From Euprymna scolopes (Eukaryota): a stretch of DNA of 64,000 nt. The stretch lies in the NCBI GenBank assembly GCA_053919585.1, contig CM132783.1. One strand, 5' to 3'. Made by a program: the position numbers and the translations under genes. Below the pieces are notes generated by a model, which was given only the letters and a program-made list of their open reading frames with translations, was not told the origin of the DNA and searched no databases. Below, piece after piece: positions 25,431-64,000 of the stretch (its first letter is position 1; every line of letters starts with the position of its first letter).

Positions 25431-26503
25431 GGTTTCTGGGGTTTGATAAGTGGTGGGCGTTTATAAAAAAAATACGTATTTCAGTGTATAATAAATTAAT
25501 TATTCTGCATTAATCAAATATATATTATCTCTGGGTGATGCCGACCGGCTGACCGGATTGCGAGTATATCTTTAAATATGATAATTTGTATTAGAAAGAG
25601 CACATCTGAACATAGGTACTCAAGTCATTTTTAATCGACGTATGATATATTTAGTATATGTATACATATATGTGGACAAATTTTGGATAAGTGTTCATCT
25701 CTATACTTGGGTTAGTTCTGGGTCAAAATTGAAGAAAATGACACTAAGGAGTCAACTGTTTTTCAACTGCTTACGTATGACAGCTGACCTATGGTCAGAA
25801 CAATAATTTTGAAAAGTCATTAAAATCGTAGCAATCTTGCCGATGAGTTGTCGTACACAAATCTTTGTCTTTAGGTTTTAGATTTATAACATAATAGTCA
25901 ATTGCATGTTTTATATTTTACCTTTTTGCTTCATTATTTTAAAGAAATTCAACGTTACGTTAAATACCGGGCATCTCCGTGTACACATGCTTGTATATGT
26001 ATATATATATATACTGATTTTAGTTACGTTAATGGTTTGGTGAAATTAGCTGAACATTATTATTTACTGAAACAAGGTTTTTAAAAGAACTAATGCCGAC
26101 GATGCAGAAGAATACAGAACCGTTTGGATAATATATCTTAGCTTTGTGTGTGTTTATAGCCAGCACATATTTTTTTTTTAAATAAAATCAGAGATTCTTT
26201 ATTCGGTAGTGGTTTTATTTGCATATGGGATTTACTTGCATGCTTAAGGGATTTATTTATTTATTTTTAAATTAAAACATGGCACATATATTGTGCTAAA
26301 GCGGTAGCATTCCATACAGTTAAATAAACTATACTCCCATAATATATATAAAAATGATATAAACCNNNNNNNNNNNNNNNNNNNNNNNNNNNNNNNNNNN
26401 NNNNNNNNNNNNNNNNNNNNNNNNNNNNNNNNNNNNNNNNNNNNNNNNNNNNNNNNNNNNNNNNNNNNNNNNNNNNNNNNNNNNNNNNNNNNNNNNNNNN
26501 NNN

Positions 26504-26773
26504 NTGTTTAAGCACCCCACTCTTTGGGTAGAGAACTGTCATAAAACATCTCAGCGCTATTTAATTGGCTGAAAAAGTCGATGCTCGCTTGTAACCAGGC
26601 GGTTTGAGCACTGTAATAGTGATGGACGAATGTTCATGAAGGTCACTTACGGTCGATGCGGAGAACTGCCGTTTAAAAATGTGATCGTTCTAGGTTAAAT
26701 CCTCGGCTTGGGAGTGGGCTAGTCTGCATAACTGATGAGTTGAGATACAAGAAAATACTGTATATGGATGACT
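26504..26773 (+). mobile_element. Degenerate SINE/retrozyme-like element ending in a hammerhead-like motif
   Basis: GC-elevated island with B-box-like ggttaaatcc (~26692), followed by cataa-CTGATGA-GTTG-AGATA-CAA-GAAA-atactg-TA-tatgga (26727-26768). Confidence 0.5.
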
Positions 26774-62511: not shown

Positions 62512-63012
62512 GGGGTGTATAATCGTATATTTTACCGTATATGTATTTTCAAGTATCTAATCAGAGAATGTTTAATGTTTTTTAACATTGAAGCTTAAAT
62601 TGTTTATCTTATTATCAGTTTTGTAATTATTGCATGGCTTTTCTATACGCCGAATNNNNNNNNNNNNNNNNNNNNNNNNNNNNNNNNNNNNNNNNNNNNN
62701 NNNNNNNNNNNNNNNNNNNNNNNNNNNNNNNNNNNNNNNNNNNNNNNNNNNNNNNNNNNNNNNNNNNNNNNNNNNNNNNNNNNNNNNNNNNNNNNNNNNN
62801 NNNNNNNNNNNNNNCGAGAGAGAGCTCATCTTATAACGATTAGGTCACTGTCTGGCTGGTGTAAAGAACATTTAAACAAAAATTAAAACGATTAAATTCA
62901 ACGTTATTTATCGCAGTTAATGGTAGCCGAATGGATACGGTCTTTGCTAATCTAGCCAAAGAGGTCTCGTGTTGCCGAGTTCGACTTGTTCGACTGGTGT
63001 TAATCGTCACAC

Positions 63013-63059
63013 CCTGCAATGAAGATTCCCGAAAAGAATAAAACACTAGTGTACGTAGG
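63013..63059 (+). ncRNA. Type I hammerhead ribozyme, copy 1 (core mutated)
   Basis: cctgca-ATGAAGA-ttcccgaaaagaat-AAAAC-actagt-GTA-cgtagg, with C3>A and G12>A. Confidence 0.65.
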
Positions 63060-63358
63060 TATTTAATTATTATAGTAAAAAAATAATTATGACAGCCCCT
63101 TTAAGAAATCTGATTCTTATCATTTTACACTTTCAGTTAAATTAAACTCGGTCAATGTAGCTCTCATACATAGACCATCGTATAACGATTAGATCACTGT
63201 CTGACTTACGTAAAGAACATTTGAAAAATTAAAATGTTTAAATCCAATGTTATTTCACCCGGTTAATGTTAGCCCAATGGATACGGTCTTTGCTAATCGA
63301 GCCAGAGATTCCTCGTGTTGCCGAGATCGAATCCTTCGACTGGTGTTAATCGCGACAC

Positions 63359-63404
63359 CCTGCACTGAAGATTCCCGAAAGGATGACACAATAGTCTCTG
63401 TAGT
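63359..63404 (+). ncRNA. Type I hammerhead ribozyme, copy 2 (stem II intact, GAAA and stem III mutated)
   Basis: cctgca-CTGAAGA-t-tcc-cgaaa-gga-t-GACAC-aatagt-CTC-tgtagt. Confidence 0.65.
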
Positions 63405-63616
63405 TACTTAATTATTAGAGTAAAAAACACATTATGACAGCCCCTTTTAGAAATTCGTTTCCCATCGTTGAGCACGTTTAGTTGAATTAAAATCAGTCAA
63501 TTTAGCTCCTGTACTTGGATCATCGTTTAATTATTAGATAAGTGTCTGACTGACGTAAACAACGTTAAAAATAAATTAAAATATTCAAATTCAACGTTAT
63601 TTCACGCGGTTAATGG

Positions 63617-63681
63617 TAGCCGAATGGATACGGTATTTGCTAATCGAGCGAGAGATGGCTCGTGTTGCTGAGTTCGAATCC
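63617..63681 (+). promoter_or_regulatory. RNA polymerase III type 2 internal promoter (tRNA-Ser-like head) in unit 3
   Basis: A box TAGCCGAATGG (63617-63627) fits TRGCNNARYGG; B box GTTCGAATCC (63672-63681). Equivalents are at 62924/62979 and 63270/63325. Confidence 0.75.
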
Positions 63682-63705
63682 TTCGACTGGTTTTAATCGT
63701 GACAC

Positions 63706-63751
63706 CCTGCACTGAAGATTCCCGAAATGATGAAACACTAGTGTCTGTAGG
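63706..63751 (+). ncRNA. Type I hammerhead ribozyme, copy 3 (catalytic core intact)
   Basis: Stem I cctgca/tgtagg, core CTGAAGA (63712-63718), GAAA (63732-63735), stem III within palindrome ACACTAGTGT, and cleavage triplet GTC (63743-63745). Confidence 0.85.
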
Positions 63752-64000
63752 TATTTAATTATTAAAGTAAAAAAAAATAGGTATATATATACTAAAATCT
63801 AGAGTCTTAGATGTATTCAATCTTAATTCTTATTACGGATATTTCATCATGGATTTTGCTTATAAGTAAGTTACCATGCTGGCTTTTTTAATTATTCTAC
63901 CTTTTTGGGAGTTGTCTGGTATATGTTGCTTGTACGATATAACAAATTACATATCTTAATTTTAATTTTCTTCATTTGAAACTCAGCCACAGTCCTGCAA

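What the first reader, a model, noticed from the sequence alone, without database searches (positions are those of the whole stretch)
63611..63751. Each unit fuses a tRNA-Ser(GCT)-like Pol III head directly to the ribozyme
Seen: GGTAGCCGAATGGATACGG..TGCTAATC..hairpin (consensus CGAGCCA-gaga-TGGCTCG)..GTTCGAATCC, ending ~25 nt before hammerhead stem I. A and B boxes are retained in all three units (B box weakest in unit 1). Established: eukaryotic tRNA-Ser(GCT) reads GGTGGCCGAGTGGTTAAGG..CTGCTAATC..long variable arm..GGTTCGAATCC, and Sm-alpha also pairs a tRNA-derived promoter with a hammerhead. Inference: this is a self-transcribing SINE-ribozyme chimera, possibly arising independently of Sm-alpha from a serine tRNA. 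The acceptor and anticodon stems do not fold, so it is not a functional tRNA.
Basis: partly seen in the sequence, partly recalled or inferred. Interest (0 to 1): 0.85.

Follow-up and report, generated by a model that had tools for sequence, protein, structure and literature searches.

The report
tRNA-Ser-derived head on hammerhead retroelement
Each unit of this 346-bp tandem repeat carries a decayed copy of the host's serine tRNA(GCT) gene, promoter boxes intact, just upstream of a hammerhead ribozyme; it is one old copy of a several-thousand-copy mobile element built like the blood-fluke Sm-alpha SINE, so it is a new example of a known design.

Summary
All three units (window 62815-63777) carry a collinear A box, TGCTAATC anticodon loop, long-variable-arm hairpin and B box, ending about 22-31 nt before a type I hammerhead.

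- **Origin:** the family consensus aligns to the host's own tRNA-Ser(GCT) at z 7.4 (0 of 1000 shuffles). It aligns worse to Ser(TGA), Ser(AGA) and Thr.
- **Not a tRNA:** ARAGORN and the Rfam tRNA model are blank, and the head folds as a rod.
- **Family:** about 343 nt, young (about 95% identical to consensus). 1,787 genomic copies match all three motifs exactly. Copies are 3'-anchored, 5'-truncated partial tandems inside (TA)n microsatellites, a Penelope-like footprint.
- **For Pol III use:**
  - The box match and spacing fit.
  - The consensus has no TTTT run (p about 0.02).
  - Three template-switch-tagged RNA 5' ends lie 13 nt upstream of box A.
  - B box followed by hammerhead recurs 886 times in at least six families, some with other tRNA-like heads.
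- **Against:**
  - Bulk RNA-seq depth is flat on both strands.
  - Genomic 5' ends show no start-site class.
  - The head is internal, not at the 5' end.

Verdict: tRNA-Ser(GCT) derivation is solid; promoter function is likely but unproven. It is a new member of the Sm-alpha / animal retrozyme kind. This scan already noted the same family and sister families elsewhere in this genome.

The parts
62815..63172 (+). Unit 1 of the tandem array, 5'-truncated. It starts at about consensus 75-85, at the edge of the N block 62656-62814. Dead hammerhead: C3>A, and C17 lost.
   Evidence: TRF; alignment A1; about 89.5% identical to the family consensus.
63173..63518 (+). Unit 2, a full 346-bp unit. A box TAGCCCAATGG 63270-63280; B box AGATCGAATCC 63324-63334. 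The hammerhead GAAA has mutated to GACA.
   Evidence: about 90.6% identical to the consensus.
63519..63777 (+). Unit 3, ending at the family's fixed 3' end (A-run), followed by a short (TA)n.
   Evidence: about 90% identical to the consensus.
63604..63604 (+). Predicted Pol III start (A of TTTC|ACGCGG; consensus position about 167), 13 nt upstream of box A.
   Evidence: Template-switch-oligo loose ends sit 'before' L011:1582 in 3 reads of the single-cell oligo-dT run X22, mapped by homology. This is an inference for this particular copy.
63609..63688 (+). tRNA-Ser(GCT)-derived module of unit 3, covering tRNA positions about 1-76.
   Evidence: Alignment to host tRNA-Ser(GCT) at z 5.6-7.4; weak host tRNA-Ser covariance-model hits fall only on family heads.
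63617..63627 (+). A box TAGCCGAATGG (10 of 11 to TRGCNNAGTGG).
   Evidence: Read directly. Invariant in the subfamily consensus sequences.
63638..63645 (+). Anticodon-loop relic TGCTAATC, with the GCT anticodon.
   Evidence: Identical 8-mer in the host tRNA-Ser(GCT).
63645..63662 (+). Variable-arm-like hairpin CGAGC-GAGAGATG-GCTCG.
   Evidence: Fold. One subfamily shows a paired G-C to A-U change in this stem.
63671..63681 (+). B box AGTTCGAATCC. The host tRNA-Ser(GCT) reads AGTTCGAATCT.
   Evidence: The core GTTCGAATC is kept in all subfamilies.
63691..63694 (+). A TTTT run private to some copies. It would act as a Pol III terminator between head and ribozyme in this copy.
   Evidence: The consensus reads GGTGTTAATCG and the whole consensus has no T4 run. 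4 of 38 sampled units carry this variant.
63705..63752 (+). Type I hammerhead of unit 3: stem I CCCTGCA / TGTAGGT, CTGAAGA, weakened stem II, GAA, palindromic stem III ACACTAGTGT, and the cut after C 63745.
   Evidence: Read directly. Rfam is blank on this copy but gives Hammerhead_1 at 20.3 bits, E 0.005, on the consensus-like copy L029:1677-1722.
62924..62988 (+). Unit 1 module: A box 62924-62934 intact; B box 62978-62988 degraded (AGTTCGACTTG).
   Evidence: host tRNA-Ser covariance-model hit at 62917-62993, 11.2 bits.

Best explanation
The stretch is an old, roughly 90%-identical 2.7-unit insertion of a young, several-thousand-copy, non-coding retroelement of a large mollusc genome (5.9 Gb).

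Each 343-nt unit has four parts:
- a 165-170-nt AT-rich 5' part;
- a module descended from the host tRNA-Ser(GCT) gene, which keeps box A, the anticodon loop, a variable-arm hairpin and box B but has lost the cloverleaf;
- a type I hammerhead with a palindromic helix III, about 22-31 nt downstream;
- an AT-rich tail ending in A7-TAATTAT.

Most likely mechanism, with each step marked:
1. The tRNA relic is an internal type-2 RNA polymerase III promoter. It starts transcription about 13 nt upstream of box A (weak direct support).
2. The unit has no TTTT run, so in a partial tandem the polymerase runs through two ribozymes (inferred).
3. Self-cleavage releases unit-length RNA that still contains its own promoter and may be circularised (inferred from the published retrozyme model).
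4. A Penelope-like reverse transcriptase copies this RNA into nicked (TA)n microsatellites from a fixed internal 3' site. That gives 3'-anchored, 5'-truncated partial tandems. The footprint is shown here; the enzyme is not identified.

The window copy itself is dead or nearly so.
For: tRNA origin:
- The consensus scores z 7.4 against host tRNA-Ser(GCT), against 3.4, 1.4 and 0.2 for Ser(TGA), Ser(AGA) and Thr. Every subfamily head gives z 4.9-6.2.
- One subfamily keeps GAGTTCGAATCTC exactly as in the tRNA. An old 81%-identical copy keeps GAGTGGTT and GAC..GGT, closer to the tRNA than the young consensus is.
- The host tRNA-Ser covariance model's only hits in 161 kb are on family heads.

Family and insertion mode:
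- There were 2,458-2,766 first-look candidates and 1,787 exact triple-motif copies against 0 in the control.
- Copies average 94.6% identity to the consensus.
- They have (TA)n on both flanks, a fixed 3' end and variable 5' ends, often 1.x-mers.
- Penelope-like elements are reported to form partial tandems and to prefer (TA)n (PMC8557442) and to start reverse transcription internally (PMC11167929).

Promoter use:
- Box A matches 10 of 11 positions and box B 10 of 11, at class II tRNA spacing.
- The consensus has 0 T4 runs despite nine TTT runs. Shuffles average 2.6, and 2.3% have none.
- Run X22 shows a 3-4-fold sense excess over the head, plus 3 template-switch-tagged 5' ends at consensus about 167 with no upstream GGG.
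- GGTTCGANNCC followed 8-38 nt later by CTGATGAG occurs 886 times against 0 in the control, in at least six families. Some of those have Ala(CGC)-like or GTC-anticodon-like heads.

Ribozyme: Hammerhead_1 at 20.3 bits on the consensus-like copy L029:1677-1722.
Against: - The RNA 5'-end evidence is only three reads in one single-cell library. A second tagged end at consensus 24 is equally supported.
- Bulk RNA-seq (X23, X24) covers the whole unit evenly in both orientations with no start or end pile-ups, as read-through transcription would.
- Genomic 5' junctions cluster at AT-containing microhomology sites. They are about 5.7 times commoner just upstream of the ribozyme than at the head's 5' edge (396 against 70 minus-strand loci), so no start-site-defined copy class is visible.
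- The module is internal, and the 165-170 nt upstream of it would not be in a transcript started there unless the template is a tandem or a circle.
- Boxes are no better conserved than their flanks among copies.
- The T4 avoidance is only p about 0.02.
- The hammerhead has a U-U closing pair in stem II and scores below Rfam's gathering threshold. No cleavage ends were seen.
- No Penelope-like partner was identified.
Confidence: 0.6

Rival explanations
1. The tRNA-Ser module is a fossil. It is a relic of the element's ancestry (an old tRNA-SINE or a captured tRNA pseudogene) that no longer drives transcription. RNA comes from read-through of host Pol II transcripts or from an unrecognised promoter elsewhere in the unit.
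For: - Flat, strand-symmetric bulk RNA-seq coverage with read-through into the flanking (TA)n.
- The module is internal.
- Abundant 5' classes start at consensus about 77 and about 1, not at the head.
- No excess conservation of the boxes among copies.
- Published animal retrozymes have no known promoter (PMC7761336).
Against: - Boxes A and B are invariant in every subfamily consensus, while diagnostic changes fall beside them.
- The consensus has no T4 run.
- Tagged 5' ends lie at the canonical distance from box A.
- The same B-box-then-hammerhead arrangement is kept in at least six families with different tRNA-like heads, which is hard to explain for a functionless relic.
Confidence: 0.22
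2. The tRNA-derived module is kept for an RNA-level role rather than as a promoter. Possible roles are a structured rod that stabilises the (circular) RNA, a handle for tRNA-processing or ligating enzymes, or a recognition element for the reverse transcriptase.
For: - The head folds into a long imperfect hairpin pairing the A-box half with the B-box half, capped by the variable-arm hairpin (z -1.5 to -2.2).
- The whole unit folded as a circle is somewhat more stable than shuffles (z -1.8).
- One subfamily shows a paired G-C to A-U change in the variable-arm stem.
- The tRNA ligase RtcB circularises animal retrozyme RNA in vitro (PMC7229834).
Against: - The folding z-scores are weak.
- The single paired change consists of two CpG transitions and counts as one event.
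- The cloverleaf that RNase P, RNase Z and ligase-associated factors read is gone.
- This role does not explain the T4 avoidance or the 5' ends.
- It is compatible with, rather than exclusive of, a promoter role.
Confidence: 0.13
3. The resemblance to tRNA-Ser is coincidental: short GC-richer motifs in an AT-rich repeat.
For: The Rfam tRNA model and ARAGORN find nothing. The host tRNA-Ser covariance model reaches only 9-14.5 bits.
Against: - A collinear match of four tRNA landmarks at the right spacing, z 7.4, 0 of 1000 shuffles, specific to Ser(GCT) among the tRNAs tested.
- Older and sister copies are more tRNA-like.
- All weak covariance-model hits in 161 kb fall on the heads.
Confidence: 0.03

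Closest known systems
Sm-alpha / Sj-alpha SINE-like elements of Schistosoma (Ferbeyre et al. 1998; Laha et al. 2000; summarised in PMC2770079 and PMC8490949)
   Same: A roughly 335-bp non-coding repeat, found both dispersed and in tandem, in thousands of copies. It combines a tRNA-related Pol III-type module with a type I hammerhead in the same unit.
   Different: - The parent tRNA differs: Sm-alpha copies are called tRNA-Gln(TTG)-like by tRNAscan (PMC2770079), whereas this one is Ser(GCT)-like and too decayed for any tRNA finder.
- The hammerhead here has a U-U closing pair in stem II and a short palindromic helix III (dimer type). The Sm-alpha ribozyme is a fast, tertiary-stabilised one.
- The host phylum differs.
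- That Sm-alpha carries A and B boxes is from my recollection of Ferbeyre 1998, which could not be opened.
Animal non-LTR retrozymes (Cervera & de la Pena 2020, PMC7229834; review PMC7761336)
   Same: Tandem units of 170-400 bp, each with a type I hammerhead, non-coding and in high copy number. Here the dimer-type helix III resembles the amphibian ones, and multimer-spanning RNA reads are present.
   Different: The published families are said to have no conserved motif pointing to a promoter or partner (PMC7761336). This one has a recognisable tRNA-derived A/B-box module and a strict (TA)n target. Circular RNA was not shown here.
Penelope-like elements and their non-autonomous derivatives (PMC4209133, PMC8557442, PMC11167929, bioRxiv 10.64898/2026.07.22.740005)
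   Same: A hammerhead near the element end, partial-tandem insertions with a 5'-truncated upstream copy, a microsatellite (TA)n target bias, and a fixed internal 3' start.
   Different: There is no ORF here. Penelope-like elements are not known to carry tRNA-derived promoters.
Classical tRNA-derived SINEs (type 2 Pol III internal promoter; overview in PMC10886601)
   Same: A tRNA-derived module with A and B boxes, decayed stems, and no T4 run in the body.
   Different: The module lies 170 nt inside the unit, not at the 5' end. There is no LINE-type tail, poly(A) or target-site duplication. Copies are tandem 1.x-mers in (TA)n.

Membership tests
Functional tRNA-Ser(GCT) gene | Cloverleaf with acceptor, D, anticodon and T stems plus a long variable arm, detectable by tRNA finders. 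| tested here: not met
   ARAGORN finds 0 genes in the window. Rfam RF00005 gives no hit at E<=10 on 2 kb or on a 105-nt slice. The host tRNA-Ser covariance model reaches 8.8-14.5 bits only. The minimum-energy fold is a rod.
tRNA-derived sequence (descent from tRNA-Ser(GCT)) | Significant collinear similarity to the host tRNA, best to that isoacceptor. | tested here: met
   z 7.4 and 0 of 1000 shuffles, against z 3.4, 1.4 and 0.2 for Ser(TGA), Ser(AGA) and Thr(TGT). All subfamilies give z 4.9-6.2. Only Ser isoacceptors and Thr were compared (Lys was sampled but not compared; Leu and others were not sampled).
tRNA-derived SINE | A and B boxes at tRNA spacing. | tested here: met
   TAGCCGAATGG and AGTTCGAATC(C/G/T) start 54 nt apart, as in a class II tRNA.
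tRNA-derived SINE | The tRNA-related head lies at the 5' end of the element, with copies starting at the Pol III start site. | tested here: not met
   The head is at consensus 172-255 of 343. The common 5' ends are at consensus about 77 and about 1. Junctions near consensus 162-170 exist but are few and coincide with TA microhomology.
tRNA-derived SINE | Transcribed by RNA polymerase III. | tested here: inconclusive
   For: three template-switch-tagged 5' ends 13 nt upstream of box A, a sense-strand excess in X22, and no T4 run in the consensus. Against: bulk RNA-seq is flat and strand-symmetric. Polymerase dependence cannot be tested with these tools.
tRNA-derived SINE | A LINE-derived or poly(A) 3' tail, and target-site duplications. 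| tested here: not met
   The 3' end is ..GTAAAAAAATAATTAT, abutting (TA)n. No duplications are discernible because the target is a microsatellite.
Animal non-LTR retrozyme | Tandem non-coding units of 170-400 bp, each with a type I hammerhead. | tested here: met
   Period 346-347. Hammerhead_1 at 20.3 bits, E 0.005, over the full model on L029. There were 982 first-look candidates for a junction-spanning query.
Animal non-LTR retrozyme | Expressed as self-cleaved, circular unit-length RNA. | tested here: inconclusive
   RNA reads span the unit junction in 4 runs, but that junction also exists in DNA. No pile-up of ends was seen at the cleavage site. Circularity needs RNase R treatment or 2D PAGE.
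Penelope-like-element-mobilised non-autonomous element | Partial-tandem insertions, a microsatellite target and a hammerhead near the end. | tested here: met
   (33 elements); compared with the descriptions in PMC8557442 and PMC11167929.
Penelope-like-element-mobilised non-autonomous element | Shares its 3' end or tail with an autonomous Penelope-like element in the same genome. | not tested
Sm-alpha family (homology) | Sequence homology to the Schistosoma Sm-alpha consensus. | not tested
The different parent tRNA (Gln-like, PMC2770079) argues against shared head ancestry.

The most novel reading that the evidence does not exclude
This genome (by its features a cephalopod) may hold a whole superfamily of retrozyme-type elements in which different host tRNA genes were repeatedly captured immediately upstream of a hammerhead. 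The heads seen are Ser(GCT), Ala(CGC)-like, a GTC-anticodon type and others. The result would be self-contained Pol III transcription units whose promoter rides inside the ribozyme-excised, possibly circular, RNA, mobilised by Penelope-type machinery into (TA)n. That would answer how animal retrozymes are transcribed and give the first promoter-plus-partner model for them.
Probability: 0.35. Interest if true: 0.65.

Novelty: new member of a known kind. Interest (0 to 1): 0.45.

Why it matters
Animal retrozymes and hammerhead satellites are abundant. Their promoter and their autonomous partner are still open questions: the 2020 review (PMC7761336) states that no conserved motif points to either.

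This family offers both handles in one element. It has a recognisable tRNA-derived Pol III promoter module placed so that it is carried inside the ribozyme-bounded RNA. It also has a strict (TA)n, partial-tandem insertion footprint that points to Penelope-like machinery.

The same B-box-then-hammerhead layout recurs in at least six families with different tRNA-like heads in this one genome. That makes the promoter hypothesis testable by comparison and at the bench.

The design was already known from Schistosoma Sm-alpha, so for a specialist this extends a known design to a new phylum rather than being a surprise.

Tried and rejected
- **Rfam on the window** (gathering threshold, and E<=10 on 2 kb and on 91-105-nt slices): no tRNA and no hammerhead hit. 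L011 also failed because its GAAA core is mutated. Only the consensus-like copy L029 gave Hammerhead_1.
I rejected this as uninformative because inserted copies decay neutrally. Subfamily-diagnostic sites avoid the box cores, but not significantly (about 1.2 expected, 0 seen).
- **Start-site class among genomic 5' ends:** about half of the listed junctions within 30 nt of the head lie at consensus 162-170. The control window upstream of the ribozyme has about 5.7 times more junctions, all at AT-containing sites. So this looks like microhomology plus 5' truncation, not a start site.
- **Poly(A) loose ends after the A-run in X22**: about 28 A followed by other letters fits the oligo-dT primer, so this is not evidence of polyadenylation.
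  - A Ser(NGA) pattern with one A too many gave a false zero; I corrected it.
An unbiased 5'-end sample and a search for the Penelope-like partner were therefore not possible.
  - A regex scan of the 326 kb already held found no other B-box-plus-hammerhead families. Genome-wide patterns did find them.
- **Ferbeyre 1998** (PMC108972) is not held in the library.
- **Masked letters:** a flank print overlapped the window's masked N block. Those letters are not used.
Full report
**1. What is in the window**

Window 62815-63777 (+) is a head-to-tail array with a period of 346-347 bp, 2.7 copies and 82% matches (TRF; alignment A1). It starts at the edge of a masked N block (62656-62814). It ends in an A-run followed by a short (TA)n.

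In unit 3 the parts are:
- A box TAGCCGAATGG, 63617-63627;
- TGCTAATC, 63638-63645;
- a hairpin, 63645-63662;
- B box AGTTCGAATCC, 63671-63681;
- 23 nt further on, a hammerhead-like motif: stem I CCCTGCA, CTGAAGA, stem II, GAA, the palindrome ACACTAGTGT, C, then TGTAGGT.

The A-box 19-mer occurs three times within 3 mismatches, against 0.01 expected. Units 1 and 2 carry mutated boxes and dead ribozyme cores. Unit 3 keeps all the cores but has a TTTT run (63691-63694) between head and ribozyme. ARAGORN finds no tRNA. Rfam finds neither a tRNA nor a hammerhead in the window, even on 91-105-nt slices.

**2. It is one copy of a large, young family**

The window belongs to a 5.9-Gb assembly. A 257-nt query gave 2,458 first-look candidates, with the scored hits 88-91% identical to this copy.

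From 30 loci I extracted 33 elements and 40 units and built a 343-nt consensus. Copies average 94.6% identity to the consensus (range 81-98%). The window's three units are about 90%.

An exact three-motif pattern (TGCTAATC, then GTTCGAATC, then CTGANGA) occurs 1,787 times in the genome and 0 times in the reversed control. At about 5% divergence per site, that implies several thousand head-bearing copies. Many more copies are 5'-truncated to ribozyme plus tail.

**3. Anatomy and insertion footprint**

The natural frame of the unit has these parts:
- It starts ATGACAGCCCC.
- The tRNA-like module is at consensus 172-255.
- The hammerhead is at 266-315, with cleavage after position 308.
- The unit ends ..GTAAAAAAATAATTAT.

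Nearly all elements are flanked on both sides by (TA)n. The 3' end is fixed. The 5' end varies, and many elements consist of a 5'-truncated unit followed by a full unit.

Recurrent 5' ends at consensus about 77 (TATGCATA) and about 1 (TAATTATGAC) lie at TA-like sites. The same is true of the junction hot spots found genome-wide. So the 5' ends look like truncation plus microhomology with the (TA)n target.

Partial tandems, (TA)n preference, a hammerhead near the end and an internal reverse-transcription start are the published signatures of Penelope-like elements (PMC8557442, PMC11167929, PMC4209133). A 2026 preprint argues that animal retrozymes are their non-autonomous derivatives (10.64898/2026.07.22.740005).

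**4. Is the head derived from tRNA-Ser(GCT)?**

The host carries hundreds of tRNA-Ser(GCT) genes (ARAGORN). I also recovered Ser(AGA), Ser(TGA), Thr and Lys genes.

| Host tRNA compared with the family consensus | Local alignment score | z against shuffles | Shuffles reaching the score (of 1000) |
|---|---|---|---|
| Ser(GCT) | 41 | 7.4 | 0 |
| Ser(TGA) | 31 | 3.4 | 3 |
| Ser(AGA) | 24 | 1.4 | 111 |
| Thr(TGT) | 20 | 0.2 | 406 |

The Ser(GCT) alignment runs collinearly through four landmarks:
- GGTAGCCGAATGGATACGG against GGTGGCCGAGTGGTTAAGG;
- TGCTAAT against TGCTAAT;
- the variable arm;
- GAGTTCGAATC against GAGTTCGAATC.

Heads of all subfamilies, and of window unit 3, give z 4.9-6.2.

Two further observations fit descent with decay. 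One subfamily reads GAGTTCGAATCTC.TCGAC, as in the tRNA's T arm and 3' acceptor. An old copy, 81% identical to the consensus, keeps GAGTGGTT and a GAC..GGT 5' end, where the young consensus has drifted.

A covariance model built from ten host serine tRNAs gives only 8.8-14.5 bits. However, all 11 hits in 161 kb lie exactly on family heads.

Conclusion: derivation from a class II serine tRNA, best fitting GCT, is well supported. Leu and other tRNAs were not sampled. It is not a working tRNA: the head's minimum-energy fold is an imperfect rod capped by the variable-arm hairpin.

**5. Is 'the ribozyme' real?**

On a consensus-like copy (L029:1677-1722), Rfam Hammerhead_1 aligns over its full length at 20.3 bits, E 0.005. 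That is below the gathering score of 34, and the alignment flags the U-U pair that closes stem II. Helix III is a 10-nt palindrome, as in the dimer-acting amphibian and Penelope-type hammerheads (PMC7229834, PMC7761336). A few older relatives in the genome carry the canonical CTGATGA. Activity was not tested.

**6. Does the head work as a Pol III promoter?**

Evidence for:
- (a) The boxes match 10 of 11 and 10 of 11 positions, at class II tRNA spacing.
- (b) The consensus has nine TTT runs but no TTTT. Dinucleotide shuffles average 2.6 T4 runs and only 2.3% have none. The A strand, by contrast, has three runs of four or more. Some decayed copies, including window unit 3, have gained a T4 run.
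- (c) RNA evidence comes from the single-cell oligo-dT library X22.
  - Sense-strand reads are 3-4 times commoner than antisense reads over the head.
  - Three reads carry the template-switch oligo directly before L011:1582. That is consensus position 167, the A of TTTC|ACGCGG, 13 nt upstream of box A and 5 nt upstream of tRNA position 1.
  - There is no upstream GGG that could explain strand invasion.
- (d) Comparative evidence:
  - A canonical B box followed 8-38 nt later by CTGATGAG occurs 886 times, against 0 in the control, in at least six sequence-distinct families.
  - Where an AGTGG lies upstream, the bodies carry different anticodon-loop relics..GCCTCGCATGC.. (Ala-CGC-like)..GACTGTCAAC.. 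and ..GGACTGAAAT...
  - The decayed element at window 26504-26773 belongs to the second of these families.
  - An architecture kept while the tRNA part changes argues that the tRNA part is functional.

Evidence against, or neutral:
- Bulk RNA-seq (X23, X24) covers the whole unit evenly in both orientations. It runs into the flanking (TA)n and shows no pile-ups of starts or ends.
- The tagged end at consensus 167 rests on three reads, and a second tagged end at consensus 24 has equal support.
- Genomic 5' ends give no start-site class.
- Box divergence among copies equals that of the flanks, as expected for dead copies.

**7. A mechanism that fits the layout**

A promoter 170 nt inside the unit makes sense only for tandem or circular templates. 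In a 1.5-mer, a start at position 167 lies upstream of ribozyme 1, and with no terminator the transcript reaches ribozyme 2. The excised 343-nt RNA then contains its own internal promoter, so every new tandem insertion is again a transcription unit.

This is the published retrozyme model (PMC7229834, PMC7761336) with a promoter added. It is inference, and neither cleavage nor circles were seen here. Folded as a circle, the unit is only modestly more stable than shuffles (z -1.8).

**8. Comparison and novelty**

The closest known thing is Sm-alpha/Sj-alpha of Schistosoma: a roughly 335-bp SINE-like repeat with a hammerhead, many copies of which tRNAscan calls tRNA-Gln(TTG)-like (PMC2770079, PMC8490949). 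The design is the same. The parent tRNA, the ribozyme type and the phylum differ.

Full-text searches found no description of such elements in cephalopods or other molluscs. One squid genome paper merely counts 235 Hammerhead_1 hits (PMC6962438).

This scan had already flagged the same 347-nt Ser family and several sister families elsewhere in this genome. I used those notes as leads and re-tested the key ones myself.

**Verdict**

- tRNA-Ser(GCT) ancestry is well supported.
- Pol III promoter function is likely, at about 0.6, but unproven.
- This is a new member of a known kind, and the window copy itself is a decayed one.

Noticed in passing
window 26504-26773 (+): A decayed copy of a second, sequence-unrelated family with a tRNA-like head and a hammerhead (..GGTTAAATCCTCGGCTTGGGAG..CTGATGAG), ending in (CA)n(TA)n. 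Intact genomic relatives read GGTTCGATCCCCGGCTTGGGAGAGGTGTTAGTCTAGCGGCACTGATGAG and carry a ..GACTGTCAAC.. anticodon-loop-like motif upstream.
   Followed up: partly
G000 genome-wide: A canonical B box followed 8-38 nt later by CTGATGAG occurs 886 times, against 0 in the reversed control, in at least six distinct families. Some heads look Ala(CGC)-like (..GCCTCGCATGC..) or carry ..GGACTGAAAT..
   Followed up: partly
G000:C29:87.57-87.64 Mb; loci L069-L072: A giant head-to-tail array of tRNA-Ser(GCT) genes. There are about 615 pattern hits genome-wide, most of them here, spaced about 213 bp apart, with occasional mutated copies.
   Followed up: no
G000:C11:1.68-2.16 Mb; loci L031-L060: Tandem arrays of tRNA-Thr genes spaced 144 bp apart. 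Some copies keep the Thr body but have anticodons changed to TTT (read as Lys) or ACT, so anticodon-shifted tRNA genes sit inside an array.
   Followed up: no
G000:C7:13.35-13.42 Mb; loci L077-L084: A tRNA-Ser(AGA) tandem array spaced about 284 bp apart, including one copy with anticodon ATA on a Ser body and several copies with broken stems.
   Followed up: no
genome-wide listing: One subfamily of the Ser-head family has a paired change in the variable-arm hairpin: CGAGCCA/TGGCTCG becomes CAAGCCA/TGGCTTG (G-C to A-U). About 18 of 23 listed copies with the first change also have the second, against about 3-4 of 75 without it. Both changes are CpG transitions, so this counts as one event only.
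   Followed up: partly
window: 11 N blocks of 139-244 bases (for example 62656-62814 and 26366-26504): The masked N blocks often abut repeats, and both hammerhead elements in the window begin right at an N-block edge. The letters were not looked up or used.
   Followed up: no
L011:1416-1758 laid with runs X22-X24 and X9: The family is present in RNA libraries labelled as two different organisms (A and B), with different subfamily-diagnostic letters in each. In organism B many reads diverge from the reference just at the 5' half of the hammerhead (loose ends at 1680 and 1696).
   Followed up: no
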